Positions 1 to 31,635 of a stretch of DNA of 64,000 nucleotides are shown piece by piece. Location of the stretch: the NCBI RefSeq assembly GCF_963853765.1, contig NC_088855.1, forward strand, positions 24,118,001-24,182,000, in the 5' to 3' direction. Position 1 is the first letter of the stretch. Every line of letters begins with the position of its first letter. Origin of the DNA: Magallana gigas (taxonomy: Eukaryota). Made by a program: the position numbers and the translations under genes. The notes below the pieces were generated by a model. It saw only the letters and a program-made list of their open reading frames with translations. It made no database searches and was not told the origin of the DNA.

Positions 1-1164
1 GCTTCCATATTCCTGAAATGCCGTATTTTCATGCAGCTAATAACGATATATAACTCATATTCTTGAGTCAAAATCACCAAACTCTTCATCAATATGGACA
101 AAAGAAAAGTTTGAAACTTTTTTAAAAATAATTTATTTTCAACATCTAACATAAACATTAAAACAGAGCCATAAGGGTGTTGGTACCTCTAATTTTATTA
201 ACACACAGTACATTATTGCAATATATTAGTAAATGGATGTAAATTGATATATAACATTGATTACTGCACGATGACCGTGAAAGTTGAAAATTGATAACAA
301 TGCAAGTAAATAGTGTTCAATTTGTTGAAAGGACAGTATATGGCAATATGTCTGTAGACAAAAACATTGTATAACGTTAAACCTAATTATACTCAAGCCT
401 ATTGATGATTCAAACTTTTAACGTGGCATTTGATCGTAGTCGCTAGTCCTAAAATAAGTCCCCGACATCCCGTGACTTATACTTTTTATGAAAGAACGTC
501 ATAACTTGGCAATTTCATCCCAATATAAAACGGTTTTATCGCCAATTATGGTTGCTTATCTTTGTAGTGCAATGGGTATAGCTTAGATCTAATGACCCGA
601 AATTTGAATGATGAAGCAGGGGCTTTTGTTTTTCATGAATAGCAACACTTACAGCTTTTTTTTAAATTTATGACCCCCCCCCCCCCCCTTGGAGAAAAAA
701 GTATCATTAACTTCCTCTCATTTTACGTGTAAACTGTAATTCTATATCTATAAGAAGAAAAATATAAGCTTAAATGCAAAACTTTTCCCTATGAATTGGA
801 GGACCCTTAATATCATATTAACAGGTTGTCATTCATGCGATATATAAGGCATTATAATTTAAAATTATCATCGTTAAACCTATATATAACATTGGCTACT
901 GTATATACCGGTAATCATAGCATTCCCAAAGCAGATGAAACACTTTTCAAAAAGTTATATTTTTCTATATTTAATATTCATATTCACCCACCCTGTAACA
1001 CTTGATTTTGCTCAATTGTTTGTAATTAATGTTACACCGACAAGCTTGAAATTGAAATATTAGATTGCTGGTTTCATTATGCAAAATGTCTTGATTAGGC
1101 GTAGAGCCAACACCCTGGCGTTGCAAATACCGAAGAACCCTATATGTTCCGAAGAAACGATGAT

Positions 1165-4100
1165 TTAGTTTTCCTCATGGTATTTGTGCATCAGAGCGTT
1201 AAGCATGGGGGACTTGGACATTGGTGGCCTCCTGCTCTCGAGGGCCTCGATACGGTGGTGCAGCATCTCGTTTTTGGCGATGAGGCTCTTTGCCAAAGTA
1301 CGGCTGTAAAACAAAAAAAACCCATTCATTATAGCTATCGGAAACCTCTGGTGAAGATACCTTAACATATAACATATCTCATTTCAGACGATAATTGATT
1401 GAGTGTCTCTGCTAATTGGAAACTTCGGGGAAAAAAATTATACCATGGAAATAGCAAATAAAGTGCTGCAATTTCTATGCAAATTTCAAACACTAAACTG
1501 GTGATTTAAAACAACGAAAATTTATGGGATCTCTTAAATTGTTGACTTTTGAATGTTATCTCTTCTTAAATTGCTTCATGCACTTTAACGACATTGCTCA
1601 CAATGACAATGCAATATTGTTTTCATTATGTGTCCTCGTTTTAAACATAGATCAGGGTATTCCTTACAATCATAAACATTGCGACTTACTAGTGAAGAAG
1701 ATCCTGGAAAATCTCGCTGACTTCCTCCTCGGAGAAATGGCTGCCGGGCATACCGACATTGGTGGGCCTGTCACCACCATCCACATTGATCTCAAGGTTC
1801 AAGGTCAGGGGAGCTATAAATAGAATTATCCTTGTATTAAATCGGTGTCAAATCGTAGGGTTTTTTTCCCGAAAAATTAAAAGATACTTTAACTTCAGTC
1901 GAATTACAAAAGAGACAAAATAACTGTGTGTATGGTCTGAATCTTACCTCCATATTGAGGAGCTGGGCCCATGGGCATTGGGGCGGGCTGCATTGGGGGC
2001 ATGGTCTGGGCCATCATCATTTCCTCGATCATTGGCCAGTATTCCTGGGCTTTCTCCATGATGTACGGCAACAGCTTGTTGGGCTCATCTGTGGTAGGAA
2101 CAAGGGTTTGTTAAATCTTGATGTGTTTACATGTATTTATTCATGTTGAATCTATTCCTTCTGTGAGCATCTGGAGATTTTAAGAATAATGAGGGCAATA
2201 ATACTTTTAATAAAACATACCGACTGGGACGCCGAAAGCTCTCAGTTTCTCCATGATTGTGTTTGTAATAGAGTCGAAGCTGAAACCTTCGGAGAAATCG
2301 AATCCGAATTCCTTGGCCTTCTCGTTGGCGATTTCTCTGACTTTCATGAGGGACTCCTCTGGTTTCTCTGGGTCGACTTCAAACCCTGCCTCCTGCAGAT
2401 CACTGATGATGTTTTTGACGATCATCTGCTTGAACTCATCGTTGTCCATATCAGCTGTAATGATGAGAGATATTTTTGAATCAAACAAATACAAAAATGT
2501 TTAAAATATAGAACCTCATTAAAATTTCGACACACTTTTTTCCCCTTAATATTTATTTAGAATACTGTAGATGAAGAAGCAAGCTTTTATTTTGAACAAT
2601 CGCATTAAACAACCCACTTCTTCTCGAGAGAGAAAAAACCCCGCGAGTATGGTGTTTAAAGAAAGCAAATATATAAAGAATATAGTTTTACATCGAATTG
2701 AACTCTTTAAAAAGTCCAGACCTAGATACAGTTTTGTGTGTAGCTGTATTTGATACTTACGTTCTACGCCATAAGATACTTTCATCTCCTCCAGAATCTG
2801 TCTCTTCAGCTCTTCGGGGTTGCTCAGGTCCAAGCCTTCCTCCTTCAGGTCTCCCATGATCTTCTCCTTCAATTTTCCGACAATGTCGCTGGTGTCGACT
2901 ACACAAAAGTTAAAAAAACACGTGCTGTTAAATTCACATGTCAAACAATAGAGAAGGAGATATAAGAAACGTTAAATAGTCTGAAAAACACCTTAACACA
3001 AAATATAGTAACTGAACTCACCATCCTCGATTTTCATGTCAAGGTCTTTCTCGACCTGTTTCAGGAGATCTTTCTTCATCTTGGGGATGATATCGTTGAG
3101 ATCACCTGAAAGTCATATATGAAATGAATTATAGAATGCCTTTTATATACCGATGCCAAAATACACATTTGTATATAGCGCGCCTTTATTTTAAAAAAAT
3201 GCAATGTTGATGATCGCGTTTCCTAATGCAGGTCGCATATACAAGATATCCCAGTAATAATTACACATATGAAGGTCACCTTCAATTCCCATCCCTTTCA
3301 TCATGTCCTTGATCTGGTCAGTGTTAAAGGCGGCGTTGTCCTTGACCTGGTCAGCCAGGGCGCTCAGGTCCATGTCCTTGGGCAGGTTCTTAACCATATC
3401 CTCAAGCTGGGACTCGTCCACTCCTGGAACAGTCAACAACTACGGTTAGTTTCATTTATTTTTAATGGGGGGGGGGGGGCAATGATCGATGTATCTTCCC
3501 CTTATTGAAAATGTGTGGTAATCGTATATATTAACAGTTATTAAAGATGCAGCGGTTATCAGGTTGTGACATACCCATGCTGTGCATCATGTCCTTCATT
3601 TGAGGGGGGAGGTTCTTGAGGGCATCCTCGATTTTCTCTGGGGTAAGGTCTTTCAACATCTCTGGGTTGATGCTTGACATCATGCTTGAGATGTCCATAC
3701 CGCCAAACACTGAAAAGCAAACGTTGAACAATGATGCAAATCAAATGTAACAGTAATGTAAGATGGACGGTTTGTTTTCGGATACAGTAGTGTTGTTTGA
3801 GAATCAATTTTTAACCGTTTTCTAGTTCTTGCTTTGTTTGATTTTCTTTAAAATTCAATATGGAAACTGGATGGTCAAAATTGACCATCAGATTTTTCTG
3901 TAAATTTTTATATTGATTTATCTACTTATCATTTAGTAAAGAAAAAAATTAAAATATTCAAATTTAGAAATTGAATATTTGCTTTCTTTTAATATACAGC
4001 TCTTCTTTTTTGGAGATTGATATAGTGTAAAAATGACCACAACCATCAAGCCCTTTTAAGCTTTGCATCATTTTATATGATTCCAAACTTGATACCAAGA

Positions 4101-4217
4101 AGATGCATTCTTTAGTATCAAAGCTCAACTTGCCCAAGGTTTCAACAACTTGACCGCAAACTTACTTTGGCCCATGGCAACTGTTGCCAGCATTCCAATA
4201 ATTACAATTCGGATCAT
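1165..4217 (-). CDS. Secreted Met-rich acidic helical-repeat protein, paralogue A (~396 aa, 9 coding exons), function unknown
   Basis: Coding exons 4217-4166, 3709-3575, 3423-3280, 3105-3022, 2898-2761, 2454-2221, 2088-1948, 1813-1690, 1303-1165 join at GT-AG sites into 1191 nt ending in TAA. Hydrophobic signal-like N-terminus MIRIVIIGMLATVAMG; about 39 Met, no Cys; C-terminus DLLHYRTLAKSLIAKNEMLHHRIEALE. A paralogue lies at 7431-10519. Confidence 0.9.
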
Positions 4218-4426
4218 TTCTACAATAGAAATATAAAAGAATAAAGCACTTGGTAATGGTTTGTATTGAATGGGGGTGACAATGATACAAGATTCACCTG
4301 ATGTCAGCAATTATTATTTGCATGATTTCAGACATCAATCAACAATCTCTTAGAAAAATAAAGGTAGCTAAGGAATTTTCTTTAAAAAAAAATTGTTGCA
4401 CATATAATTCAACCACATCTACTTAC

Positions 4427-4482
4427 TGCTTGCGAGTTCACTGTGTAACTGACTAAAATCTGGATTTCCCGGCTATATATAT
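4427..4482 (-). promoter_or_regulatory. Core promoter (TATA + Inr) and short non-coding exon 1 of paralogue A
   Basis: On the minus strand TATATATA (~4474-4482) lies 24-32 nt upstream of TCAGTT (4447-4452). A ~25-nt exon then ends at a consensus GTAAGT donor (4421-4426); the acceptor at 4220-4221 is 2 nt before the ATG. Confidence 0.7.
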
Positions 4483-5108
4483 TACCTCTGATGTAATATG
4501 ACGGTTCGGGTAACATCACATTCGGGTAACATGTCGATTACGGAAGATGCAATATAACTTAGGGGCAACAGGAAGAAGCATGAAACAAACGTGGCACCGT
4601 GTAAATTGCTCTCAGATAGAACAGCAGACGGCAAGGTTTAGGATCGTCTGCAGTTACGTATTAATCCGTAATTCACAAGTTAAATGAAAGTAATATTTTA
4701 ATGGCCCGAGGTTGTGTTAAAACATCAGGGTACACGGTAAATATTTGTTTTATAATAAACGAGATACAACTTCCCTCTTTTAGTTTATACCTTTACTTAT
4801 CGTAAATATTTTGTATGGGGATTTCTTCAAAAAGGTAAGAACAAGCCGGATGCCAAAGAAAGTTTATAATAATACAAATTAATTGCTTTTATATTCGACA
4901 AAGCGGATCCATCAACAAACAGATCTTTGCTAAGATAATAAGATGCTTAATACGGATTCAAGTGTTCAATGCAACTTTGTAAAATGGATAATTAAATGTT
5001 GCTATTCCCTTATTTTTGTAATCACCAATAAGTTTAATTAAATCGATGTTGTTGTATTTAGCTATTACTTTATGATGACATTATACATGAATTATGATAT
5101 TGATATTT

Positions 5109-5208
5109 ATGTCCTTTCTGATATATTTCATTTTATCAAATCAAATATACAACATGACTACTTGTTGTATATTTGATTTGATAAAATGAAATATATCAGA
5201 AAGGACAT
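5109..5208. repeat. Perfect 46-bp inverted repeat with 8-nt loop
   Basis: ATGTCCTTTCTG...TACAACA (5109-5154) is the exact reverse complement of 5163-5208. Related half-copies lie near 5560-5595 and 5680-5740. Confidence 0.9.
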
Positions 5209-7430
5209 TTACTTACAAGTAATTTTTCTCATTTATTGGATTATAAATAGAAAAAAGAGATAATTATGATCAATTATAATTTAAAGGGTCCTAAAATATT
5301 AAACATAACCGCTTATTTCTTTTGCAACAAGTAGCAGTTTTTTTTAAAGCATATTGCTTGATGTATTATTTCATATCGTGTGTATTTCAGAAAATAAATG
5401 TATATTTTAAATAAAAGTATGTTAGAAAATTTTTCAGAAAACATTATCATTAAACGTATGTTTTCTTTTTTTTTTACTCCAGAGTTACGCTTTTTGTCAA
5501 ACAAATTCGTTGATTTTAAATGCTTTAGGATAATTTACAATAAGATTGTCACGCATATTTAATTTGATAAAAATGAAATATATATGGAAGGACACTTGCA
5601 GAGATTCGCTTTTGCTACCTTCATAGTCCGTATGAACCCCAAAAGAAAGGAGTTTACTATTCACATAATTTCATCTCTCTGTCCTTTCTGACATACTATA
5701 CTTCTTGAATAAAATCTGCAAATGACTACTTCAATATTTCAGAAATGATGTCTTCTTAACTCTCTCCGATCTATAGTTTATTATCTATACAAATGGAGTG
5801 AAAGTTCGTAAAGTCGTTGTTTTCGATCCTTACGAATTTTGACGTCAATCCGTGCATTTTCAATAAAGTTAAAAGTTTCTACGAAAAATATGCCTCAAAG
5901 GCATAAAATATAGACATCATTATGCAATGTAAACATTTTCCAAGGATAACGGGTAAAACGCTGTTATTCACTATATGAACACTGCTTAAAAATACCGGGT
6001 ACATTTGAAGACAGTTTTTAACGTTTTTGAAAGGCTTTTTTTTTTTTTTACATGTATACTGGTTTATACACAGAATTGGTTTTGTGAATAGCACTATGAA
6101 CACAAAGAAATTTCTGAAGAATTAGAGAAATAGAAAACATTTAGCAGATTTATATTAAACATTTATATCTTTATTATTGACATATATTGATATACCAAAA
6201 GACAATTATGTATACTACAGTAGGCTACAAGCGTTTTGCAATCGTTATACACATGTATATTACATGATAACATTTTATAATAAATAGAACAATCGATCAA
6301 ACATATGATCAAGAATTCATCGTCTATATTTCTTGTTTTATTACTGGAGTTAAACAAACATTATTATTCCTAGATTATTATTTACACTAAACTAATGTTG
6401 ATATCTTTGCTTCAATCTTAATTTTGAACAATGGAAACAAATCAACCCGGAAGTATAAGGACTGCTTATCAGATAAGTAAACATATTCTACAGAGATCCC
6501 AGCACTTTTAAACTGATGTAAACTAGTGATTTATGTTGTATATTTGATAAGATTAAACTTCTCCAAAAGATTATATTTTAAAATGCTTTCCCCACTGTTA
6601 CATATATTAAGTATCTATGATAGATTTTTCAAATTATATAGGTAAAAAAAGATAATGCAAAATGAAATGATAAAAAAGATTTCTACTTGAATGTAGAATA
6701 AGGTAAGATTTTTCGATTGAAAGTGTTTCTGCAATTTTTGGTAGACTAGATTTTTTTTTTTAATTCAATTCACTCAATTCATTTAGAACCCCATCTCTCA
6801 TTTTTGATAACTAAAATTATTCGTAATGTAATTTTTCAATTTAATTTGAATTACTGTGTTGAGACAACTTATATAATTTCTAAATGCCATTGATATCATT
6901 TTTTAAATTCATCTTTGCAAATTATAAAATCAAGGAGTGGACTTGAAAAGATTTACATGCATCCCAGCTTTAGCAAATTGTAATGCAATCTTATTTAAGA
7001 AGAGAACAAACGTATCTCTTTTCAATTCCCCTCAATTAAAAGTGTGTAAAGATCAAAATGACAAGAGATAGTGGGGTGTTTATATCACGCGTTCAATTTT
7101 CCATTACTTATGTACATACTGTAGCTGTAAAATATTTCCACTTTAACGTTTGTTTTCTCTTTATCAGAACAATACTACGTTAGTTTCATTGGTTAATAAA
7201 CGCAAATCACAAATAAAAAAACACAAAAAATAAACATGATTAGCAAAAGTCATGTTTCTTTTAGATAGATTTTAATGAAGTAGTATACAGGATTTGTTGA
7301 AATTAAATCAATTCTAAAACGTTGTAATTTGATGCCTTATACATCTGTTATGTTGTTCTGGTTCGAGTTGCAGGTCTCCATCGCTGTTCTTATCTCGCGG
7401 GGTTTTTTTCTTCTCCAAACTCCTTTTTAT

Positions 7431-10400
7431 TTATTCCTCAGATCTGGCCATGATGGCGGTGAGCAGGGGTGACCTTGACATGACTGGTCTGTCCAAGGCC
7501 ATCAGGCGGTGGTGGAGCATTTGGTTCTCGGCGATCAGTTTCTTGGCCATGTGGCGGCTGTAAAAATTAGGAAACGTAATGTCTACCATTCGTTACCTTA
7601 GACTTCAACGAAATCGGTACTTTTTACTAACATTTGAATAATTATTTTTTTCAAGTCAAATTGTTTCAAACTACTCACTAGTGGAGAAGATCCTGAAGCA
7701 TTTCCATCATCTCAGCCTCTTCGTCATACTCTGCAAATGAAATTAAACAACTAGCATTCACATTTTTTCTTCACTCTAAAGGATATTATGAAGATTAATG
7801 GAGTTATAACCCAATCAACGTTGCACAGCTCTTAGCACTGTTTGATAGCTCATTTATTCGGATTATTTTACAATTGGAACGTGCAATAGTTTGACAAAAC
7901 TTACGATATCTTCCACCGAATTCTGACTCTTCGTTGTCGTCAATGTTGATTTCGAGGTTGAGGGTCAAGGGCATGGCTAAATTAAAACAAATTGAAAATA
8001 CCAAGATGCAGTTGAAATAATTAAGCATTCACGTAATTGGATGAATAAGGATACATTTGTCAGCACACAATGCAATCCGAAGACACGATCCGATCGGAAC
8101 TTACCGAATGGTGGACGCTGCATGGCCATTGGGTGCATCACTGGCATTGGTCTCATCTGGGGCATCATTTGGGGAACCATCTGGGGAACAACCTCGGGTT
8201 CTGTAAGGGGAGCGTTGTTTTTTATTGACCTGTTTTTGTTTAGCTATTTTATTGATGAATTTCTTATCTTTACAAAGTCTTAAGCATGGGCAAAAAAATA
8301 ATTATGAAATTGCTAGTTGGTGGAAGGTGGAACAATGTATGTATCAGAACGTGCGTTGGATATATGATTGATTGCTCTTACGCATGTTGCTAAGGAACTC
8401 GAGGATGAGTGGCTGGTATTCCTGGAATTTCTCCATCAGGTAGGGGATGAGTTTCTCCTGGTCATCTGGAAAAATAGATAAAACGATATCTTCAGAAACA
8501 TTCTCTATTTAAAATATAAGAGTTGAGGGTAGACTCAGCTCCTCACTTAATGTATTGCACCACCGCTTAAGGCTAAAATTTGGGTCCCGAGACACAATGT
8601 TGATGAGATTTCCATGTAAGACTATTTACCAACTGGAACGCCATTCTCTCTCATGGTTTCCATGACCTTCTTTTTGATTTCGGGCCATTCCATCTGCTCG
8701 TCGATCTCGAATCCGTAGTTCTTGGCCATCTCGAAAGCCATGGATTTCAGCTTGATGATAGCTTCCTTTGGCTCCTCTGTTTAATATGAGGAACAGTTAA
8801 TTATGGCTGCTATACAAGTATATATTATGTGAAAATGTATTCTTAACGATATTATCTTTGTTAAATATTATAGGTTAAAATTTGATAAGAATCAATACCA
8901 GGATCGATGTCGAATCCTTTTTGTTGGAGGTTGATCAGGAGATCCTTCAGAACCATCTGTCTGAACTCCCCATCGTCCATGTCGGCTGCAGAAAAAAAAA
9001 CCCCAAAAACTTCAACAACTAACACAACATTTAGTCTATTTTGTATCGATAAGACCAAAGAAAAATGTAATAAGAAAAACGGCTAAAGTCGTTAACGACT
9101 TACGGGAAACGCCAAAGTAAGCCTTGGCTCTCTGGATGATGGACTTCTTGGTTTTCTCGGGATCTTCGGAGTCGATCTCCACTCCCTCTTCCTTCAGACG
9201 ATCAATGGCGACCTGCTTCAGTTTACCGATGACGGATTCCTCGTCATCTGTGATACAGACATTCATAGAAATAGTATTTCTTAAATGGATTCGACATTTA
9301 TTCATCATTTCTTTCCGTTTCAAAAGACAACTTACCGTTATCAAAATCAATTCCAAAATCATCCTTAAATTTATTTTTCAGCTCGCCAACAATTGCGGGG
9401 AGCTCGTCAACTGTAAAGAGTGGAAAGTTTTAGCTAAAACTGACACATTCAAAGACTGAGCTTGGGTATTCATCGTTCAATGAGTAACTACATCATTGAT
9501 CCGTGTGAATTTAAGCTAACCTGGGACACCCATCTGTTCAAATGTATCCTTGCCGCCGGCGAGTTTGTCGGTCATCATGGAGGCGAGGACTTTAGGGTCC
9601 TTGGGCATCATCTTGACGGCCTGCTCAGCCTGTTCTTTTGTGATTCCTGCATAAATTCACACATTTTGCTAAAAGTCGCCGCTTACAATAAAATCTAAAA
9701 TGAAGCTTGCTATGTGATAATTTATCGATCAGATTATTTATAGAAACCAGAATGGTAAGTGTTTTGAGACAGTTCATATGATACAAAAATGACAAACAAT
9801 GAGAAAATAAATGAAAAGTTGAACTACTTTTTCGAACTTTTTGTGTAGTTCAACGTTTTCGAACTTTTTGTGTAAAGGAATGAAATGGGCATGACCCGAA
9901 CTGTGAGCGCATTTAGAGCACTAACCCATGCTTTCCATCATTTTCTGCATTTGGGGGTTCTCCAGAGCTTCGTTGATTTTCTCGGGGGTCAGGCTTTTCA
10001 TTGCGTTCTCAATGGCTCCTGGTGGCATGTTTTTCAGCATGCTTTGCATATTACCGAGGTTTCCCATGAGTCCGCCCACTGATTCGAATAAACGATTCGT
10101 ATAACAATTTTCATTTTTTTTTTTTGCAATTTTACTGAAATTCTGTCAATTTTATCACAAGTGAAAAATAATGGGTTTTCTTTAAGATTAACTTAACCAA
10201 AAAATAATAAACAATGTTTGTTATTACCATTAATTTTGGCTTAAACACAAATTTTTACTTGTTTATATATTTGCTTTGTGACAACGAGGAAAATTAAATG
10301 AACGAATTTGGTGGTTAACAGGGATAATCTCTATGCCTTTTCTTTTCAATAGAGATATCAAACAATATACGTTATCCTTGTTTGATTTGTCACTATCATT

Positions 10401-10519
10401 GATTATCAAATTTAACAAAATTTTGTTACAGTCAACTTACTGGCTCCTAAGTTCAGACCTCCAAGGTTCATGCCAAAGGCCATGGAGGCCAAGGCCCCAA
10501 GTACTACTAATCTAAGCAT
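7431..10519 (-). CDS. Secreted Met-rich acidic helical-repeat protein, paralogue B (~413 aa, 12 coding exons), function unknown
   Basis: Coding exons 10519-10441, 10078-9926, 9646-9521, 9410-9336, 9247-9104, 8985-8899, 8776-8630, 8465-8382, 8200-8105, 7976-7905, 7730-7679, 7557-7431 give 1242 nt in frame. Signal-like MLRLVVLGALASMAFG; about 44 Met, no Cys; PQMMPQMRPMPVMHPM tract. Shares PDMD..EF.QM, PLTLNLEIN and QDLLHY...MLHHR motifs with paralogue A. Confidence 0.9.
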
Positions 10520-13500
10520 TCTGAAAGAACAATATGGAAACACTGATGATAAAGTTCCAAGGCAAAAAAATATATCTGCAACAGTAAAGTTCAATCCTAT
10601 GAAATAGATTTTCTACAGATGTAAAAATGAAGATAACGTACTTCTAGTTGGGATAAGAGTTCAGGTCTTACTAAAGCAAGTGGGCCCAGTACATATACCC
10701 TTTAAAGAGTCACGTGATAAGGAGACTATGACAAAGCCAAATGAACCCGAACCAAAGGGTGAGCGGTAGAGGGTATGGTTTGTGCAAATACGTGTCGAAC
10801 ATTGTTTGGGTCCATCGCTTACATCCGAACCTCTAGGGCCTCAGGGCGAGAAGAAGAAAACGCGCACTGGTTGGTTATTTGGAAAATCCGATCATTTTAG
10901 GTGTAATCGCAAGCCTTTCGTACACGAACTGACTAATCTGGGTATCCAATTATACTGAATTACGTCCTCCGATTGTATCATCAGGTTCAGAGATACATGT
11001 CGCTGTTTATCAAATGATAAATGAGATTGGTCATTATATATTGGTACTACCCATAACGCGTCATTACGGATGATCTAGGTACTTCTGCTCCTTTGTTTTA
11101 AAACATAACTTTTCTGATGTCTTCATTTCATAAATGCAGAACAAGATATCAAATTATTTGAAATGAAAACAGCATTCTTGGTCGGGAGTAGGGGTGGGTT
11201 GTTCAAAGAAGTCAAATTGCCTAGAGAGACTTCGCTAATGTTTGATAAAAGGTTCTGGTTATTTCATAAAAACATCGTATATCATTTAAGGATTATTGTT
11301 ATTACTATAAGTAATTCACATTTTGACGATGAATACCACTGAGCCATATTCTAATGTTTATGATTTTATCTTAGATGGCTCTAGAATCGTTTCCAATCGA
11401 GCTAATAAAAAATGTGTTTTAGCAATAAAAAAATTGTGATATTACGAGGAATGACAAACAAATAGGATTTTCCGCATTGATTCTTCAATACACTGATAAT
11501 AACATGGGTAACGTATGGTCCTTTGACAATCTAAATTCAAATTTCTAGAGAAAAAAAGACGAGATAATACTGGGAACAAAAGATTTTCATTCCAGAGCGT
11601 AGTTAGAAATTAGCGAGTCTTGGACACGCAGTGACAAGCCCTCGTATTTACTTCCGCTTTCACATCAATCTTCTGCTGTCAGTGTTATGCGGCTGTTTTT
11701 CGGTTAGATCATAAATAGATCCTCTGGGCATGATTTTCTGTAGCAAACTTATGCGTGTTGTAGGGTAAAAAAGATCCCATCTACAAAACGTATTTATTTT
11801 ACTCTTAACATAAATAAAGCACAATTAAACGTTTAATTTTCCTTCCTTTTATTTGAAAACTTATTGGAATAGTTTCATTAATTAGCAGATTTTTTGGTGT
11901 TGTTGTAAAGAGAGTAAAAATTTTCCCCATTATTGGGAGGAAGTTAATTTCTCTTATCTTTCTTACACTCAGATTTTATAATTTTTAACTCTAAGAGAAC
12001 TGTGCATTTAAATACATTATAATGCTTTGTGATCCCCGGCTGCACCGATTCTGTCTTTAATAATTCCCTGTAATAATAAAGATCATCAGACAGTGTTTAT
12101 ATATAGCAAAGCGGAAAAATATTAAAATCATGCATGCTCTTAAGCCCCCCCCCCCCCCCCCCCCCTCTTCCCGTAACTGACCGCGTCGGTTGTAAACTGA
12201 TAAATCAAATGTACCAAAAAATTTTGATTATAGAGGCAGAAGTATATTGCAAATCCATGCAATGTTTACTTAATTAGAACTGGAAATAGATATAGGAAAT
12301 TACTTTTTTCCCCATCTCATACCGATTGGTTGGAAGCAACCATTTACTTTCCATACATAATGTCATTCCATCTTCGGAGATAAAGGTAATGGCATGAGTG
12401 AAATAGATCCACGAGAGCTAAAAATACGGGATGTTTAAATATAGCAGCCAATGTTTTTATATTATCGTTGATTTTGCCTGATGTAGGAATTTAACATTTT
12501 GACTTTCAGTGCACATTTCTGCAGCATTGAAATCGACATTGGTCGCCAGTCATTGAACGATAGGACAGACACAGTGTTTCCACTCAATGCATTTATTTTT
12601 AACAAATCAACTTTCAATAACAAACAAATATACGGAATATTATTGATAGCACATCTGTGAACATTGTATATTTATACAATACTTGATAAATAAGGTTATA
12701 CATATTGGTGAATGCAGTCATCTCTCAAAACATACCCAAAATACAATGTATTATAAAAATTGATATAATTATAATAAAATCCTCACATCAATTAACAAAC
12801 AAAAAAAACTAAACTCCCAAACAAACAGTTTAGATCATCATATTCTGTTGCAATGTAAAACACATCTTCTAAGGGGAACACAATCATGAATTGAACATAT
12901 AAATTTTCTGATAAATGTGTGATTTTTTTTCTCAGAACAATGCTTGATGTAATTTAAATATATGTCAATTTAACATTTCAACATATTTATTCATAACAAC
13001 TATATACTAGGCTACAAACTTAAAATGTATGCAACATTCATTCTGGAGAACATTTTTTTTGGTATCAAGTTGTGAATTCATCAGAAAACAATTATTATAG
13101 GTAATCAACATAATAGTGATCAGATTTACCTTGAATATTTAGATATGATTTCTTAAATTTTAACGATCATTTAGTAAAGAATCTAAAGCTTAAGAGGGCT
13201 GGATAGTTGTGGCCATTTTTAGACTCTATTTATCTTCTTAAAATGAAGAGCCCTGTAGGAAAACAGACAAATTTTAAAACTATAAGTATTTTTTTTCAGT
13301 GTTGCTAAGTGTTGTAAAACTTCCTGTTTGACATTTTTTTTTGAAAGAATATAAAAGCTAGGATGGAAATAAAACTTCAATAAATAATCATTAAAGCAAT
13401 ATGAGCTGCAATTTTTATGCTGAAATTTTTTTCAGCATAAATGTATCTGAAATGTTATTTTCTACCAAAATGACAAAAATATCATGGTTTTTAAATTGAT

Positions 13501-14247: not shown

Positions 14248-22908
<8,661 letters not shown>

Positions 22909-24842: not shown

Positions 24843-27800
24843 TTATCTCAAATGGTGGAAGCTGTTTTTGGGGCTGCTTTCATTCAAGCGTGGAGATTTC
24901 CTTTGACCTTGTTTGTGCACTGGTGATTTCTTTGATCTTTTGGGAAAATCATTTTCTGTGTCATCTATATCATCAATGGAAGTATTTGCAGTCTGCAGAA
25001 AGGAAAAATCATAGGTAAAATACATAATAGAAGTCTTCTGCCCTCTCTTTTATTGATTAATGATTTTTGTCCTTATGATTTTTTTCTGTTTGTGACGCTT
25101 TTACTCTTGAATGCATGATCATGTTAATTATTCAAGTTACAAAAACTCATCTTCGCTAGACAAGGGTGACAATTCACGGTGTTTTCTAATAGAGAATAAT
25201 CGTGGATCGTCACCCATGGCTAGCGAAGATTACAAAAACTATGCATCCTAGCAGTAAAACATTCACCCGTTATCAACACATGACATATATAAACATGGAT
25301 CAGTAAATAAAATGGCAAATTTTTGGGGTGAAGGCCATACTTGTATGGTTACTATCTCATTTAAATCAGACTTACTGCAAATTTTTCCTGAAGTGCAGAG
25401 TACATCACAGAGGTTAGGTTGCTGGGACTACTGGCCACCCTCTTCCTCGATTTGTTGACCAGTGGAGTACCCCCGGGGCTCCTAGAAACGTACAGGATTA
25501 TAATCAACAAAATCAAAACTTTCTAATAAATTTTGACTTGTCTTTATAAACATTTATGAAAATCAGTAGATATGACATATGGAAATGATATATGCACATT
25601 GCCATTCAGTTTTGAGTGATGATGGAAATCAAACATGATGAGAACAATACACATTTTTTACAGTATACATACAGTAAATACATAAACACTACTTGTTATT
25701 CATGAATTGAAAACTCAGATGAGGTTACTGTACCTTTTCATGTCTGTTTTCTTTAGAGTCCTCTTGAATTTGACAGCTTCTTTAGCAATCCTTGTAAAAT
25801 GAATGTTAAACATCTATAGTTGTTGAGTAATATGCCAAGTAATTGTAATTATTTATTTGTTTATATGAGAATCAAAATGAGTCAAAAATGTCAGTGACAT
25901 GAAGGCCTAACAGGAGGCAAGTTAATTCCCAATATATTCCAAAACACTTATTAAGAGATTTCATTACATGTATAAGCAGAGAAAACTAAAAGCATATGCT
26001 AACTATACTAAATAATCATTATTCAAACATACATGTACCAGTAGTTATATTTAAGTTATTTATGATAAGTGAATTTATGTTGAGGTAAAAAAAAAAATTA
26101 AGTCCAAGGGTCATAACTCTGCTAAAAATACATGTAACTGTATACTAATTTATATTTTATCTTTAATAATAAACTCAATGTCTGTAAGCACTATCTGTGA
26201 AAATTGCTGTCATGGTAGGACAGGAAAATTAACAAAAAGAAAAGAGTGACACAACATACCTGACCTTATTTTGGTGAAGCATAAAAGATATACTTGCATG
26301 TAATACTATGTGAACTCACTTCGTTTATGAAAAAAATGGAAAATAATCAAAACTTACATGGCTGTTACATCCTCTTGGATGACCCCCTCTGGTCTGCAGT
26401 TTCTTAACTTTATTCTGTTTATCTGAGCTTCACCCAGTGTCTGCTTTCCTGGCTGTTAAAAAAACAACAACAAATAAACATGATGATTGATATGATACTG
26501 TTACTCATAAACTCGGCAGAAGTTTGCTGATCATTCCAATAGGATAGTTTACAATTATGTAAATTACAAAATACATGTATAATACTCGTCTACCCAAGTT
26601 TGACATTGAGCTTTAAATTATTCAGTATGCAATTAATATAGCATATTGTCTACAGTAAAACATGGTTTACAGGGAGCATGCTTGTAACAAATTTGTGCAA
26701 ACTGTGACATATAGTCCCTGAATCCCTAGTTGGGTGCTCTGTCAACTGAGCTATCTGGCACTGGTACTACATGTAATAATTGAACAGGTCTTGCAATCAC
26801 ATTTGTAACAAATTAAATACTGTAGACAGGGTTATTTTTGTGTAATTTTCACCCTTTAACACTTGCAAACAGTTTAGCCCCGTCTTGAATTTTCGCCCAG
26901 ACACAGCTGTGTTTAAAGAAAGATAGTTTGAGACATTGGAATTCGCCCAGTCTTAAATTCGCCCACTAACAACAAGGGCAAAAGGGGCGAAAATAAAACG
27001 GGGGCAAATATTTCCCTGTATACAGTAGTTGGTTTTTGGCAATTTAATATAAGACTAGTGTGTTTATTAGATGGTTATTTCCTTCAGTTACAGCAAGAGG
27101 TTACTTAATATGAGGAATAAACTACATAATGACTTGATGTCATAACACTGTCAATCTAAGACAGTCACTGAAAACCCCACCTCAGAGTCCACAGTCTTCT
27201 GCCTTTGTCTCAGTTTGACTGATTTCAAAGCTTCTTCTGTTACCAGAAAAACTCTGTTCTCATTTTCCTGGATCTGTACAGAAATTAAGTTCAAGTAAAA
27301 TACATTATTTCAGCAAAAATGATGAAAGAATTACTGGTATATTGGCGGTAAGTGAATCTAGTGAAATACCAAAATACATTAAAGCATCAGTCATTATACT
27401 TACTATTTTCCTTTTAGGTTTTATTCTGGTGGTCATCAGACTGGAGCTTGGTGTTGCTGGAGGAGGGGGTGGGGGTGGCGGTGGAGGAGGGGGAGGGGGT
27501 GGGACTGATGTACCGGTAGTCGTAAATTCCGAGACATTTGATTGCTTCTTGTCCAGAGGTTGGCCACACCTGGCACACAAACATTGGCAGGGGGAGCACA
27601 ATGTCGGTTGGACCAAATTGTATGGACCATCCTTTTTAAAACACAAGTAAATGTAAACAGAAATAAATAAATTTAGTCATACATATGTATGTGCATTAAT
27701 GACAATCACAACAGTTTCTTTTTAATTGTTGTGGTAGGTCTATATATATACTGTTCTTAGACTGATCCTGACTGTCACTTTAATCATGTCTAGACAGAAC

Positions 27801-28936
27801 TCTATTACTCGGAGACACGTAAATATTACACTTTTAAATGCATCAATAAACAACCTATGTTGGGGCTGAATTTCAAGACATAAATTATGGCGGACTGTCA
27901 TGAGATTCATTGAAAGCATCAGTCCAAATTTCACGTTGAGCCAAATCTATATCTAGATTAGTTCTACATACTAGATGCAATTAGTACCTGTTTGTCTTTC
28001 TTCAAAATGTTTAATTCTCTCTCTAACAGTTCAATTTTGTTTAGTGCTGTCTGAATTTCTTCCTGAAAATTTGCTTCTCTTGATACATCTGATTCCTTCG
28101 ATTTCTGCAAAAGATGAAAAATAGAAGAGTTTTCATAAGTACATGTACCTTTAAAACAGAGTCATTAACAGTTAGTATATACATATATGTCTTTGTTCAA
28201 AACAACAATCTAAAAAAGAAGACAACTTAACAGATTAAATCAAGTACAGAGTAAATCATATTCTTTTATATGTACTGTACTGTACATGTAGTGTTTGAAA
28301 TATAATTTTCTTTTCTAGCTGTCATAAAAGTGTTAATTTTTTCTCTGTAAGAAGACTCTGTTTATGCCAAATTTTAAATTTCTATAATAATTTCAGCTAC
28401 TGTCTAATGAGCCACTACTATGATATTTTCTTTTGTATGCTACATTCAATCATGCATAGCTACATGCCTATACATTTCCATACAAATTTCAATATTCATG
28501 TCTGCACTTATAATTCATTCCTCCAAAATCTTTAAAAAAAAACCATGACTTCCCTTCTCTGTAAAATATCTACCAGTAATTGTAAATAAAATATCCTTTC
28601 ATTATAAATTAATATTTAAATTAGATTTAGTCACATTATTAAAGTATTTATTATAGACATATGCCTTCTGGATCTGGCCATAGTATAAATCTCCCATCGC
28701 TTCAATTTCAAATTTAGAAACTTGCTTAATTAATGCCATTAACAAATACTAAAGTACAGGCTACAAACTAATCATAAAACCTTTGTCATTCTCTGTTGAC
28801 ACCATGAATAGATTGATGAAAAACCACTCATTTTTGAGACAAATTCGCCCACTTTATACATGTTGTACCATGGCAGTAAATCTGGTGCAACTGTCCTTAT
28901 GAAAGTTTGTTTGGGACTTGCTGTTGTGGGTTCCAT
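24843..28936 (-). CDS. PRR11: Proline-rich protein 11 orthologue (~333 aa, 8 coding exons; true 5' end uncertain)
   Basis: Exons 28936-28781, 28104-27988, 27631-27404, 27273-27181, 26452-26358, 25790-25734, 25481-25376, 24992-24843 give 1002 nt in frame. Motifs SIYSWCQ, a coiled coil, a C-x-x-C segment, a polyproline tract, LKSVKLR, RSPGGTPL and LTSVMYSALQEKF match human PRR11 as I recall it. Adjacency to SKA2 supports the call. Confidence 0.85.
26818..27027. mobile_element. MITE (~210 bp)
   Basis: Inverted termini TACTGTAGACAGGG / CCCTGTATACAGTA inside a PRR11 intron. Confidence 0.75.
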
Positions 28937-29610
28937 TCTGGAAAAAATATATTTATATGGTAGCATCAAAGTATGATTGCATTGCAGACACTTGCTGGAA
29001 CATCATATTATATTGTTGAAAAACGGTTAAAACCACAGTCCTTCTTGCTTCTCTTTCCCCCCGTGGGAGGACTGTCGACAGGGAGGTACATGTACAAGAA
29101 CTAGAACTAAGACTGACCACAGGTTTTCGACAAGACAGCAATCACTTTTAAACTTTTGAAAAATATTTAGCCATTTTATTTTCTGAATTTTTTATGATAT
29201 AATATTATATGCTTTATTGTTGATAATAGTATTTTAAGTATAATGATAAATCTAGGGTTTTGATGTTAATCGTTTTACATTTATTCTTGGTAAAATTCTG
29301 TACAGCGTATATACTAATTACTATATACTTATTAATACTAATTCAGCAGTATTCAAAATCAGACTTATCAACTACCTTGTTGACAATATATAGTCTCAAT
29401 TTTCGACGCAAAATCTTTCACATATCTTGAAAACACAGCATGCACAGTGGAAGTCTACAATAATAATTAGAGTAAAGATAAATACCATTATAAGTATTAA
29501 AGCAATTTACTTTTGAATTCTATAAAAAAAAGGGTTGTCTTATAAATTATATTTTATCACTTTTATCATGTTTATACTCTGTTCTTCGATTCACATTTAA
29601 TTTGATTAAT

Positions 29611-30371
29611 CAGGTTGGGACTAATCTCTCAAATGGGATATAATAGCCCGTTTGGGATATAATAGCCCAAAGTGCAAAAAATAAAAAAATTTGATTTTGA
29701 AATTTTTGATATAAATCCGCATTAGAATAGATGTAATACAACAACTTTTGGTAAACAACTTTTTTTTATTATACATTCATGTTAAATACTGAAATCTGAT
29801 TGGTTAAGACCCCGGTGATAATCCGTTCTATTACCCTCAGCATTAGCAACACACAACACAACGTACGAATTAATTGTTACATGCTAAATTATGCGCGTAC
29901 GGTTCGCCGTGGAATTCACATCATTTCTATATAGAAGCAGTAAGAAAATCTCTAAAATTAAGACAGTCAGTGTAATAAAATAAATAGTACATGTTTGGGG
30001 TGGATAACAGTTGAAATTGAAACCCCTCGAAAACCATTAATGTCAACCTCCGCTTTGCGTCGGTTGACAATGGTTTCCTCGGGGTGTCAATTTCAACTGT
30101 TACCCTCCCAAACAGGCACTATTTATATACTGTAGCTGTACTTTTATAGAGATTGATCCCTCAATATATCCAAAACTTACTGGGGATCAATCTTACAAAC
30201 TATAACGTTAGACAAATAGATAAACTTCTAAACCAAAAGTTGTTGCATTTGATTCACATTAATGCGGATTTATTTCAAAAAATTTAAAATAAAATTTTTC
30301 TATTTTTTGCACTTTAAATTTATATCCCATTTGGGCTATTATATCCCATTTGGGAGATTGGTCCCAACCTG
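29611..30371. mobile_element. TIR element (~760 bp) between PRR11 and SKA2, containing a second repeat that ends in a long hairpin
   Basis: Termini CAGGTTGGGACTAATCTC / GAGATTGGTCCCAACCTG with imperfect inverted similarity over ~140 bp; TTAAT on both flanks. Internal 29982-30124 is an imperfect ~143-bp palindrome. Confidence 0.8.
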
Positions 30372-30574
30372 TTAATTACTCGATATATTTAGATGTCATG
30401 CACGTAATATTTTACTTGAGTCTACCATCAACTTCTTATTTTACAGAAATTTAAAGGTCTAGTGAATATTATGATCCTGATCACAGGCTATAACAATTTC
30501 TAAGTTTTGAAATAGTCCACTAACCTTCTAACAGTTGCCATCATGATGTTCCTGCCATTTGTACCTCCCGCTAT

Positions 30575-30654
30575 AATATAACCAATTAGAATCTACCTTA
30601 CATAAATTCAACCAACCAACTTTCTTGTTACAAAAGCGGAAGTCAAAATTCAAG
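30575..30654 (+). promoter_or_regulatory. SKA2 proximal promoter motifs (CCAAT box, ETS-type GCGGAAGT)
   Basis: CCAAT at 30582-30586 and GCGGAAGT at 30636-30643, just upstream of the ATG. Motif match only. Confidence 0.4.
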
Positions 30655-31548
30655 ATGGAGTCCAAAGTTGAAGTTTTGGAGGCTATGGTACGTAATTTAT
30701 CAAATAATTGTTTCTTAGAGGATTTCTGTGTAAAATTTTATGCTCCCATGAGTATATCAACATGACCAAAGTGTGAAAATCACACAGTTCTTAAGACGTC
30801 GCACATAATTTTCAGATCTGCTAACTTTTGATACTGTCAGTTATTCATCACGTCTATATATGGATACCAAGACATTTGATTTCATTTAGAAATGTTATTT
30901 TCTAGAATATTTTTGTCTTTTTCTAGTTTCAGAAAGCAGAATCAGATCTCAATTTTCTGTCAAGAAAACTGGATTTTGAATTTGACCAAAACAATGAAGA
31001 GAATAAGGTATAGGATTTTGGCAAAGTACTGAAAATGAAAATAGCAAACACTAACCTTTCTTTTAAGTATAATAACAGTGACTGTATCAGATGGAGAAAA
31101 GTCAAGTTCCAAGTGAACCCAGGGCCTCAAGTGTTCTGTGCCAGCGCTCACAGCTGTTGAGACCAGTTATAATAATTAAAATGACTGACAGTCACTCATC
31201 TGTTAACCCAGTCAAATAACTATTGAATTTATGCTTGAATTATGAAGAAAAAAACCAGCATTTGCTAGTATTAATAAGATTTATCTAGGCCTGAGGGTCA
31301 GATCAACCAAACTGTACACACTACAAAAATGATCAACATTATTGTTAACTTTTTCACAAACTTAACCATGAATATGTAGTTTTGTGATTTATTGTAACAT
31401 AATGATATAATATGTAGTTTTGTGTTTTATTTGGATTATTTGGTTCTAATCATTCCACTGATTGTGTTAGAAAACAGAATTAATTAATCTCAGCGAGATT
31501 CGTTGATACTGAAAAATGTTGGCTAACGTCTCTTTAGAAGATAATCAC

Positions 31549-31635
<87 letters not shown>

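What the first reader, a model, noticed from the sequence alone, without database searches (positions are those of the whole stretch)
1165..10519. Tandem pair of unrecognised secreted, Cys-free, Met-rich helical-repeat proteins
Seen: two complete multi-exon paralogues with signal-like N-termini, ~10-11% Met, no Cys, acidic composition, a Met/Pro/Gln linker and a conserved C-terminal block. I recognise no family. Established: Met-lined helical grooves (SRP54 M domain, calmodulin, STI1-type repeats) bind hydrophobic ligands flexibly, and surface Met can scavenge oxidants or bind Cu(I)/Ag(I). Inference: this may be a lineage-specific extracellular system (shell matrix, mucus, gamete coat or haemolymph carrier). 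The strong TATA-Inr promoter suggests high, tissue-restricted expression.
Basis: partly seen in the sequence, partly recalled or inferred. Interest (0 to 1): 0.7.

Follow-up and report, generated by a model that had tools for sequence, protein, structure and literature searches.

The report
Oyster secreted methionine-rich helical protein pair

Summary
Two minus-strand paralogues (A, 396 aa, 9 coding exons; B, 413 aa, 12 coding exons; 44% identical) have only GT-AG introns. Both carry a signal-peptide-like start, 9.8% and 10.7% Met, no Cys and pI about 4.6. Every exon is confirmed by independent transcript assemblies and RNA contigs.

B is roughly 300-500 times deeper than A in two runs, and rare in a third run. 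dN/dS against Crassostrea virginica is 0.07 (A) and 0.11 (B).

The family is tiny: A and B orthologues in Crassostrea, Saccostrea and Ostrea, one syntenic gene in Pinctada, and one intronless copy on a metagenome contig. All are labelled 'uncharacterized'. No Pfam, PDB or ESM Atlas relative was found. AlphaFold gives helices but no confident fold.

The architecture is a Met-rich N module, about six 25-residue helix/acidic-loop repeats, a Met/Pro/Gln hinge, and the most conserved part, a C-terminal block. Met positions swap freely with Leu and Ile, and MxM/MxxM motifs are not enriched. That argues for Met as a flexible hydrophobic residue rather than a specific copper site.

My best guess, at low confidence, is a soluble extracellular binder or carrier. 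The tissue is unknown. The scan has noted other, disordered Met-rich secreted clusters elsewhere in this genome, but not this family.

The parts
179..4671 (-). Gene A transcription unit. 3' UTR about 980 nt, ending near 179. 5' UTR exon ends at 4427 and reaches at least 4526 (L006) or 4671 (X3 contig).
   Evidence: blastn of transcript contig L006 on the window; joint 4219|4427 and contig piece 4427-4671
1165..4217 (-). Gene A coding region, 396 aa, 9 coding exons: 4217-4166, 3709-3575, 3423-3280, 3105-3022, 2898-2761, 2454-2221, 2088-1948, 1813-1690, 1303-1165
   Evidence: GT-AG model; joints 2898|3022, 3105|3280, 3423|3575, 3709|4166; all exons in L006; P0017 is 394/396 identical
4166..4217 (-). 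A exon 1: signal peptide (residues 1-16, predicted cleavage after A-M-G), followed by a phase-1 intron
   Evidence: conserved in the family
3280..3709 (-). A exons 2-3: N-terminal Met-rich module (aa 18-110, 15% Met) made of short helices, several opening with Pro
2065..3105 (-). A exons 4-6 and the start of exon 7: central domain (aa 111-270) of about six 25-residue helix/acidic-loop repeats; 5% Met, 25% D+E
   Evidence: repeat test; seven helices in the domain model, pLDDT 67.6; composition
1948..2064 (-). A exon 7, 3' part: Met/Pro/Gln hinge (aa 271-305; 26% Met, 20% Pro)
1165..1813 (-). A exons 8-9: conserved C-terminal block (aa 306-396). It holds a strand-like motif at aa 309-321 (78% identity among the four deep lineages), a long helix at 343-374 conserved on most faces with an invariant Asn, and an invariant R-P-x-M-S-x-S-P stretch.
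   Evidence: helix 338-374 in the model
4447..4482 (-). A: TATA box (4482-4475) and Inr-like TCAGTT (A+1 at 4450). It lies inside the 5' UTR exon of the assembled transcripts.
   Evidence: sequence; transcripts read through it
7255..10664 (-). Gene B transcription unit. Short 5' UTR exon about 10664-10643. Main 3' end near 7255 after an ATTAAA signal. A longer 3' UTR form reaches about 6270.
   Evidence: L004 mapping; contigs 6270-7342 and 6725-7557
7431..10519 (-). Gene B coding region, 413 aa, 12 coding exons: 10519-10441, 10078-9926, 9646-9521, 9410-9336, 9247-9104, 8985-8899, 8776-8630, 8465-8382, 8200-8105, 7976-7905, 7730-7679, 7557-7431
   Evidence: GT-AG model; joints 7557|7679, 7730|7905, 7976|8105, 8200|8382, 8465|8630 and the loose end at 8777 that continues with the exon starting at 8899; all exons in L004
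8105..8200 (-). B exon 9: Met/Pro/Gln hinge with P-Q-M-x tetrapeptide repeats. One extra P-Q-M-I unit is present in transcript-derived P0021.
7431..7976 (-). B exons 10-12: conserved C-terminal block
10689..10716 (-). B: TATA-like GTATATG (10698-10692), with TTTAAA and a CACGTG box just upstream. It lies about 33 nt above the 5' end of transcript contig L004.
   Evidence: sequence; L004 5' end; use as a promoter not tested

Best explanation
Shown:
- A and B are a conserved tandem pair of expressed genes under strong purifying selection.
- They encode acidic, Cys-free proteins of about 43-45 kDa with signal peptides, predicted to be all-alpha.
- They belong to a small family seen only in Ostreidae, Pinctada and one unidentified source.
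- The protein has four parts:
  1. A Met-rich N module of short helices.
  2. About six 25-residue helix/acidic-loop repeats carried on phase 1-1 exons, which suggests growth by exon duplication.
  3. A Met/Pro/Gln hinge.
  4. A highly conserved C-terminal block.

Inferred:
- The mature protein is a soluble extracellular binder or carrier, acting as a holdase or ligand shuttle.
- Methionine supplies about 30% of its hydrophobic side chains, giving malleable non-polar surfaces that can hold hydrophobic or amphipathic partners.
- The E/D/K-rich repeats keep it soluble and may bind Ca2+ weakly.
- The C-terminal helix, conserved on most of its circumference, packs against a partner, either by self-association or by docking to a receptor or matrix.
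- B is the bulk form and A the minor form.
For: - Gene models and RNA.
- Full-length transcript proteins nearly identical to the models.
- Secretory features and absence of sequons.
- Constraint: dN/dS 0.07 and 0.11. GC3 is 0.65-0.69 in a locus of about 0.33 GC.
- The composition is kept in every lineage: Met 7.3-10.6%, Cys 0.
- Met columns exchange with L, I and F at the same rate as Leu columns, so Met behaves as a hydrophobic packing or surface residue.
- Met is 28-32% of M+L+I+V+F.
- All-helix predictions.
- Significant repeat of about 25 residues.
- The only PDB sequence matches are designed helical-repeat proteins, at E 1e-4 and 0.014.
- The C block is the most conserved module, 0.53 overall and 0.78 and 0.62 in its two cores.
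- Expression is very high in some runs and low in another.
- Met-lined flexible binding surfaces are established for the SRP54 M domain, calmodulin and STI1-type domains (general knowledge).
Against: - No ligand, tissue or protein-level evidence exists.
- AlphaFold confidence is low: full length pLDDT 44.6, domain pLDDT 67.6 with pTM 0.36. No groove or bundle can therefore be claimed.
- Helix amphipathicity is only moderate. In the central domain several Met residues lie off the hydrophobic face.
- The signal peptide was judged by rules, not by a predictor.
- A purely structural, storage or ion-buffering role fits much of the same evidence.
Confidence: 0.3

Rival explanations
1. Structural matrix component: the proteins are built into an extracellular material made by Ostreida, such as calcitic prisms, hinge ligament, periostracum or cement. 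The acidic loops face the mineral and the Met/Pro/Gln hinge acts as an elastic spacer.
For: - Secreted, acidic and Cys-free.
- The hinge composition recalls amelogenin-like and ligament Met-rich sequences.
- Very high transcript depth in some runs, as seen for matrix genes.
- The family is restricted to oysters, pearl oysters and one unidentified source.
- Met-rich framework proteins (LMP) are known in the Pinctada ligament (PMC13080008).
Against: - dN/dS of 0.07-0.11 and a non-repetitive, helical, E/K-rich sequence are unlike typical fast-evolving, low-complexity Asp/Ser/Gly-rich matrix proteins.
- There are only 0-3 S-x-E sites.
- Glu is at least as frequent as Asp.
- The central 160 residues hold only 5% Met.
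- Earlier scan notes place much more Met-rich, disordered secreted clusters elsewhere on this chromosome as better ligament candidates (unchecked).
- The LMP sequence could not be obtained for comparison.
Confidence: 0.2
2. Metal or calcium buffer or chaperone. Thioether-only sites would bind Cu(I)/Ag(I) in an oxidising extracellular space, as in CusF, PcoC and the Ctr1 ectodomain. Alternatively the acidic loops would buffer Ca2+. This would be relevant to the copper and zinc accumulation for which oysters are known.
For: - A Cys-free, Met-rich secreted protein is the classic signature of periplasmic or extracellular Cu(I) handling (general knowledge).
- The hinge of B reads as a run of M-x-x-M and M-x-M spacings.
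- Net charge is about -25 to -32.
Against: - Met within 3 residues of another Met is no more frequent than in shuffles, p = 0.15-0.97 in four lineages.
- Individual Met positions are not conserved as Met. They swap with Leu and Ile.
- The hinge sequence is not conserved, and in P0005 it is nearly free of such motifs.
- No EF-hand or other Ca-binding Pfam model matches, even at E <= 10.
Confidence: 0.15
3. Methionine-rich reserve or sacrificial antioxidant protein: an abundant secreted store of sulphur amino acid (egg, larva or haemolymph), or a sink for oxidants through surface Met.
For: - Met content is conserved as a composition, while individual sites drift among hydrophobic residues.
- Abundance is very high in some runs.
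- Met-rich storage hexamerins and the antioxidant Met residues of apoA-I are precedents (general knowledge).
Against: - Storage proteins need little sequence constraint. Here dN/dS is about 0.1, and the long C-terminal block and many Gly/Pro/Asp loop positions are invariant across lineages only about 44% identical overall.
- At 10%, Met is modest for a dedicated store.
Confidence: 0.12
4. Luminal helper of the regulated secretory pathway (granin-like): an acidic, Cys-free, heat-stable protein that aggregates with Ca2+ at low pH to sort or condense granule cargo, rather than acting after release.
For: - Signal peptide, acidic pI about 4.6, no Cys and no glycosylation sequons.
- A conserved C-terminal amphipathic helix, as granins use for membrane or cargo binding (general knowledge).
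Against: - No match to any granin Pfam family.
- Dibasic sites are few and not conserved, and the conserved Arg is followed by Pro.
- The high transcript depth suggests a bulk product rather than a helper.
Confidence: 0.08

Closest known systems
Met-rich flexible binding modules: SRP54 M domain, STI1/DP domains of Hop, SGTA and ubiquilin, and the Get3 groove
   Same: Short helices in which Met supplies a large share of the hydrophobic side chains (28-32% of M+L+I+V+F here). The N module has NPE, TPE and PPQ helix starts that recall STI1-type sequence.
   Different: Those modules are cytosolic; this protein has a signal peptide. No STI1 or SRP_SPB Pfam model matches even at E <= 10. There is no fold evidence.
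Calmodulin and other EF-hand helix-loop-helix proteins
   Same: Acidic, Cys-free and Met-rich, with helices joined by Asp/Glu-rich loops.
   Different: No EF-hand model matches. The loops lack the 12-residue D-x-D-x-D-G...E pattern when read directly. The protein is secreted, about 400 aa long, and has a different repeat length of about 25 residues.
Exchangeable apolipoproteins and insect apolipophorin III
   Same: Secreted, Cys-poor proteins of repeated amphipathic helices that arose by internal duplication. They carry hydrophobic cargo, and their Met residues can act as antioxidants.
   Different: No Apolipoprotein Pfam match. The period is about 25 residues, not 11 or 22. Helices are separated by 7-10-residue acidic loops. 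Hydrophobic moments are only moderate.
Designed helical repeat proteins (PDB 5cwb, 5cwg)
   Same: They are the best sequence-profile matches in the PDB, at E 1.2e-4 and 0.014 over profile positions 91-271. They share idealised E/K/L-rich helices with short Gly/Asp/Pro-capped loops.
   Different: They are artificial proteins, so the match reflects shared composition and pattern, not ancestry. Foldseek did not pair the model with them.
Bivalve Met-rich biomaterial proteins: abductin, Pinctada ligament Met-rich protein LMP, nacre MRNP34, and the oyster Met-rich clusters noted earlier by this scan
   Same: Secreted, Met-rich and mollusc-specific. The hinge segment has a similar Met/Pro/Gln flavour.
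   Different: Those are described as disordered, low-complexity, repeat-dominated framework proteins (PMC13080008; scan notes). This family is mostly charged and helical, is under strong constraint, and has only 5% Met in its largest domain. A direct comparison with LMP was not possible.

Membership tests
STI1 / HOP DP domain (Pfam STI1 families) | Match to the family HMM | tested here: not met
   hmmscan of 10 exon translations and of four full-length relatives at E <= 10 lists no STI1 model
SRP54 M domain (Pfam SRP_SPB) | Match to the family HMM; cytosolic SRP context | tested here: not met
   No hit. The protein has a signal peptide.
EF-hand calcium-binding proteins | 12-residue Ca-binding loop flanked by helices; match to EF-hand HMMs | tested here: not met
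   No EF-hand family at E <= 10. The acidic loops lack the canonical Gly-6 and Glu-12 pattern (read).
Exchangeable apolipoproteins (Pfam Apolipoprotein / ApoLp-III) | 11/22-residue amphipathic repeats; HMM match | tested here: not met
   No hit. The internal period is about 25 residues.
Met-motif Cu(I) proteins (Ctr1 ectodomain, CusF/PcoC/CopC type) | Conserved MxM/MxxM clusters that coordinate Cu(I) | tested here: not met
   No excess of close Met pairs over shuffles. Met columns are not conserved as Met. Metal binding itself is not testable here.
Pinctada ligament methionine-rich protein (LMP) | Sequence identity to LMP; Met-rich repeat forming the ligament framework | not testable with these tools
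   The papers carrying the sequence are not held. Composition argues against membership.
This family itself (Ostreida secreted Met-rich helical-repeat proteins, unnamed) | Signal peptide; no Cys; 7-11% Met; G-F-x-x-x-P-E loop motifs; P-L-T-L-N-L-E-x-N strand motif; Y-R...K-x-L-I-x-x-N-x-x-L helix; R-P-x-M-S-x-S-P | tested here: met
   Both window genes carry all of these
Secreted protein (classical ER signal peptide) | n-, h- and c-regions with small residues at -3 and -1; no later membrane anchor; no ER-retention signal | tested here: inconclusive
   The rule-based reading is positive and conserved. No predictor or proteomic evidence was on hand.

The most novel reading that the evidence does not exclude
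The family is an extracellular counterpart of the cytosolic Met-bristle binding modules (SRP54 M, STI1, Get3). It would be an abundant secreted holdase or carrier whose methionine-lined, shape-adapting surfaces bind diverse hydrophobic clients in oyster body fluids or secretions. It would be held together or docked by the conserved C-terminal helix. That would be a new class of animal extracellular chaperone or carrier with no detectable ancestry in known families.
Probability: 0.12. Interest if true: 0.75.

Novelty: new variant of a known kind. Interest (0 to 1): 0.45.

Why it matters
Oysters and pearl oysters are major aquaculture animals and models for biomineralisation, metal accumulation and stress tolerance. 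A protein that can be among the deepest transcripts of a sample would normally have a known function. This one has been kept under strong purifying selection since before oysters and pearl oysters diverged, has a very unusual hydrophobic make-up in which a third is methionine, and has no cysteine. Yet it is still labelled 'uncharacterized' in every genome. Finding its tissue and partner could reveal a lineage-specific extracellular function such as a carrier, a chaperone, a matrix organiser or a metal buffer. The family is also a clean natural case for studying Met-based flexible binding surfaces outside the cell, and for studying intron gain and loss, since it includes 9-exon, 12-exon and intronless members.

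Tried and rejected
- Pfam on ten exon translations and on four full-length relatives gave only sub-threshold, mutually inconsistent hits.
- A profile search of PDB sequences found only designed helical repeats and weak trigger-factor matches at E 0.18-1. I take these as compositional.
- The ESM Atlas gave no usable hit by features.
- AlphaFold was weak. The full-length model had pLDDT 44.6. The central domain had pLDDT 67.6 and pTM 0.36. Foldseek against the PDB gave a best E of 0.77, and the Atlas shape search gave TM <= 0.46 to unrelated bacterial proteins. None was accepted.
- Region-limited word searches with the C block and with the N module found family members only.
- Literature searches found nothing about this family. 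I searched by accession and locus names, 'methionine-rich' plus oyster, crystalline-style proteomics, SRR prefixes, and the Pinctada TSA prefix.
- Pinctada shell-matrix MRNP34 and the ligament protein LMP were considered. The LMP papers are not held.
- I considered that a tandem array in the Pinctada intron might be a hidden Met-rich coding repeat. I rejected this because every unit carries in-frame stops; the units are copies of the exon end plus its splice donor.
- A neuropeptide-precursor reading of the C-terminal helix was rejected. There are no conserved dibasic or amidation sites, and the conserved Arg precedes Pro.
- The own genome holds no further copies at E <= 0.01.
- Tissue of expression could not be determined.
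Full report
**What is there**

The stretch 1165-10519 holds two genes on the minus strand. I rebuilt them from open frames and splice signals.
- Gene A has nine coding exons (4217 down to 1165) and encodes 396 aa.
- Gene B has twelve coding exons (10519 down to 7431) and encodes 413 aa.
- Every intron is GT-AG.
- The proteins align end to end at 44% identity.
- Met is 9.8% and 10.7%, and Cys is 0.
- D+E is 75 and 71, against K+R of 43 and 46.
- The mature proteins are 43-45 kDa with pI 4.56 and 4.70.

**How the spliced models were handled**

The joined models were assembled only inside local scripts, for translation, composition, alignment and dN/dS. They were never handed to a search or fold tool.

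Searches were made exon by exon by reference. After that I used database proteins that those searches returned. P0017 is 394/396 identical to A. P0021 is 98.5% identical to B and has one extra P-Q-M-I unit. These served as stand-ins for the full-length proteins.

The N run near 15.3 kb was left alone.

**RNA evidence**

Reads and contigs of four runs were laid on 2780-8779, chosen to cover the 5' half of A and the 3' half of B.
- They gave exactly the predicted joints for A: 2898|3022, 3105|3280, 3423|3575 and 3709|4166.
- They gave exactly the predicted joints for B: 7557|7679, 7730|7905, 7976|8105, 8200|8382 and 8465|8630. A loose end at 8777 continues with the exon that starts at 8899.
- An unpredicted joint, 4219|4427, reveals a non-coding first exon of A.
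- Raw poly(A) reads show the same B joints. All first mates lie on the + strand, as expected for minus-strand RNA in a standard stranded library.

Two full-length transcript contigs from other public runs, L006 for A and L004 for B, map to every exon of both models. They also set the transcript ends.
- A runs from at least 4526 to about 179, with a 3' UTR of about 980 nt.
- B runs from about 10664 to about 7255, after an ATTAAA signal.
- A longer 3' UTR form of B reaches about 6270.

Within single runs, B is far deeper than A. Junction depths are 25,000-34,000 against 55 in X3, and about 900-1,800 against 2-5 in X4. In X1 the two are similar. In the raw-read run, only about 25 of 12.9 million sampled reads fell on B. 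Depth is a poor measure of expression, but the contrast between runs fits strong tissue- or stage-restricted expression of B.

**Promoters**

A's TATATATA (4482-4475) and an Inr-like TCAGTT with A+1 at 4450 are present with canonical spacing. However, L006 and an X3 contig carrying the full depth of A in that run read through them, to 4526 and 4671. At least part of A's RNA therefore starts upstream.

Those long leaders carry two upstream ATGs. One opens a 31-codon frame whose stop overlaps the main ATG (read).

For B, a TATA-like element lies 33 nt above the 5' end of L004. Contigs cannot show start sites, so promoter use remains untested.

**Relatives**

HMMER with the longest exon (77 aa) against 1.84 billion representatives found only ten proteins. 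A profile word search of 5.8 billion proteins found twelve clusters. Region-limited searches with the C block and the N module added only one more orthologue.

The members are:
- A and B orthologues in Crassostrea virginica (LOC111099091 and LOC111099090).
- A and B orthologues in Ostrea edulis (LOC125664899 and LOC125664898).
- Orthologues in Saccostrea.
- One gene in Pinctada imbricata and P. fucata (KAK3084274, A0A194AMK7).
- P0005, on a 64.5-kb ENA metagenome contig.

All are named 'uncharacterized' or 'hypothetical'. The own genome has only these two copies.

In C. virginica the gene order is RING-finger gene, B, A, MFS transporter. In Pinctada a RING-finger gene is followed by a single family member. 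The locus is therefore orthologous.

On a tree, the A and B clades are each monophyletic across Ostreidae. The four deep lineages (A, B, Pinctada, P0005) form an unresolved star. The duplication thus predates the oyster genera sampled.

P0005 is encoded by one uninterrupted 1194-nt frame in AT-rich, eukaryote-like DNA, with a TATA box 36 nt before its ATG.

**Constraint**

I spliced the C. virginica CDSs from L007 and compared them with the window. dN/dS is 0.068 for A (dS 1.18) and 0.113 for B (dS 0.73). GC3 is 0.65-0.69 in a locus of about 0.33 GC, which fits codon selection in abundant mRNAs.

These proteins are strongly constrained. They are not fast-evolving gamete or immune proteins, and they are not drifting low-complexity matrix proteins.

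**Anatomy of the protein**

1. Signal peptide. It has a basic residue at position 3-4, 11-13 hydrophobic residues, and A/V-x-G before the predicted cut. It is conserved in all lineages. No C-terminal KDEL/HDEL ending is present and no second long hydrophobic stretch was seen by eye; neither was tested with a predictor. There is no N-x-S/T sequon in any of four lineages.
2. N module (aa 18-110). It is 15% Met and made of short helices, several opening with Pro.
3. Central domain (aa 111-270).
   - It is 5% Met and 25% D+E.
   - The domain model has seven helices of 14-27 residues separated by 7-10-residue loops (pLDDT 67.6, pTM 0.36).
   - A profile self-comparison gives diagonal scores of 31.2 and 27.2 at offsets of 99 and 75. 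Further diagonals lie at 24-25 and 48-51. The column-shuffle maximum is 25.0. This indicates a unit of about 25 residues: a helix followed by G, hydrophobic, D/E, hydrophobic, D, P, E.
   - Introns fall in these loops. 10 of B's 11 introns and 7 of A's 8 are phase 1. That is the pattern expected for growth by duplication of symmetrical exons in an extracellular protein.
4. Met/Pro/Gln hinge. It is 21-26% Met and 20% Pro, and variable in length.
5. C block. This is the most conserved module among the four deep lineages, at 0.53 identity. Identity reaches 0.78 for the strand-like motif at 309-321 and 0.62 for residues 343-385. Only positions about 353, 357, 361, 366, 370 and 374 vary in the long helix. 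About three quarters of its surface is therefore conserved, including an invariant Asn at a heptad core position. The helix must pack against something, but AlphaFold cannot say what.

**What the methionines are doing**

Met is 28-32% of all M+L+I+V+F residues in every lineage. Individual Met columns are kept no better than Leu columns (0.44 against 0.46), and they exchange mainly with L, I, F and A.

Close Met pairs (MM, MxM, MxxM) are no more frequent than in shuffled sequences, with p = 0.15-0.97.

Selection therefore acts on having many Met among the hydrophobic residues, not on particular Met ligands. That favours the reading of Met as a flexible hydrophobic side chain. It weakens the idea of a dedicated Cu(I) site, though it does not exclude it.

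**Comparison with known families**

No Pfam model reaches its threshold on exons or on full-length relatives. STI1, SRP_SPB, EF-hand, apolipoprotein and granin models do not appear even at E <= 10.

The PDB profile search returns only designed helical-repeat proteins, at E 1.2e-4 and 0.014. This is a similarity of pattern, not of descent.

ESM Atlas features, Foldseek against the PDB, and the Atlas shape search gave nothing usable.

The family thus resembles several Met-rich or helical-repeat systems in how it might work, but it is a member of none that I could test.

The Pinctada ligament protein LMP, described as a Met-rich repeat framework protein (PMC13080008), could not be compared because its papers are not held. 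Composition argues against identity. Earlier scan notes point to far more Met-rich, disordered secreted clusters about 3.9 Mb away on this chromosome as better ligament candidates (unchecked).

**Verdict**

The interpretation as a lineage-specific extracellular system is reasonable, but its function is open. I rank the possibilities as follows:
- Soluble binder or carrier with Met-based plastic surfaces: about 0.3.
- Matrix component: about 0.2.
- Metal or Ca buffer: about 0.15.
- Storage or antioxidant protein: about 0.12.
- Granule helper: about 0.08.

The decisive missing facts are the tissue and the protein's location. Both could be obtained from existing oyster RNA-seq and proteome data.

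Noticed in passing
window 5109-5208: A perfect 46-nt inverted repeat with an 8-nt loop lies between the two genes. It is a dispersed palindromic element of about 98 bp with at least 40 scored loci (325 candidates) in the genome. RNA reads from several runs match it on both strands and run off into other flanks, which looks MITE-like.
   Followed up: partly
L005:10001-11194: An intronless member of the family (P0005, 397 aa, 43-45% identical to A, B and Pinctada) lies on an ENA metagenome contig, with its own TATA box 36 nt upstream. The oyster and Pinctada genes have 9-12 coding exons. This is either intron loss or a retrogene that replaced the parent. The host species is unknown.
   Followed up: partly
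L008:13080-13950 (Pinctada imbricata): The intron after the exon ending in ...F-M-S-M-M-Q holds about 17 tandem 54-bp copies of that exon's last ~33 nt plus its GT donor. This is a minisatellite of exon end plus splice donor. All copies have in-frame stops.
   Followed up: partly
window 8105-8200 (B exon 9): There is copy-number variation in the P-Q-M-x tetrapeptide repeat. Transcript-derived P0021 carries one extra P-Q-M-I unit compared with the window allele.
   Followed up: no
window 4516-4216 (A long 5' leader, spliced): Transcripts that start above A's TATA box contain two upstream ATGs. The second opens a 31-codon frame whose TGA overlaps the main ATG (ATGA). A start at the TATA-Inr would avoid both.
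   Followed up: no
window 6270-7430: B has a long 3' UTR isoform reaching about 6270. It is minor in run X3 (depth about 840 against 13,000-47,000) but close to CDS depth in X1.
   Followed up: no
window 3574-4212: In run X1 (organism A) the main A contig retains intron 1 and then diverges from the window at 4212, inside exon 1. This may be a structural or allelic difference at the 5' end in that organism.
   Followed up: no
window 7679-8985 versus 1690-2454: B has three introns that A lacks. They split A's exons 6, 7 and 8, and two of the three are phase 1. Exon 1 of B is 9 codons longer than that of A.
   Followed up: partly
window 15293-15520: A run of N (134 in the window) lies upstream of B. 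No convincing gene was seen between 10.7 and 27 kb by ORF listing. The region holds repeats only, including a 136-aa ORF in tandem-repeat sequence at 16797-17207.
   Followed up: no
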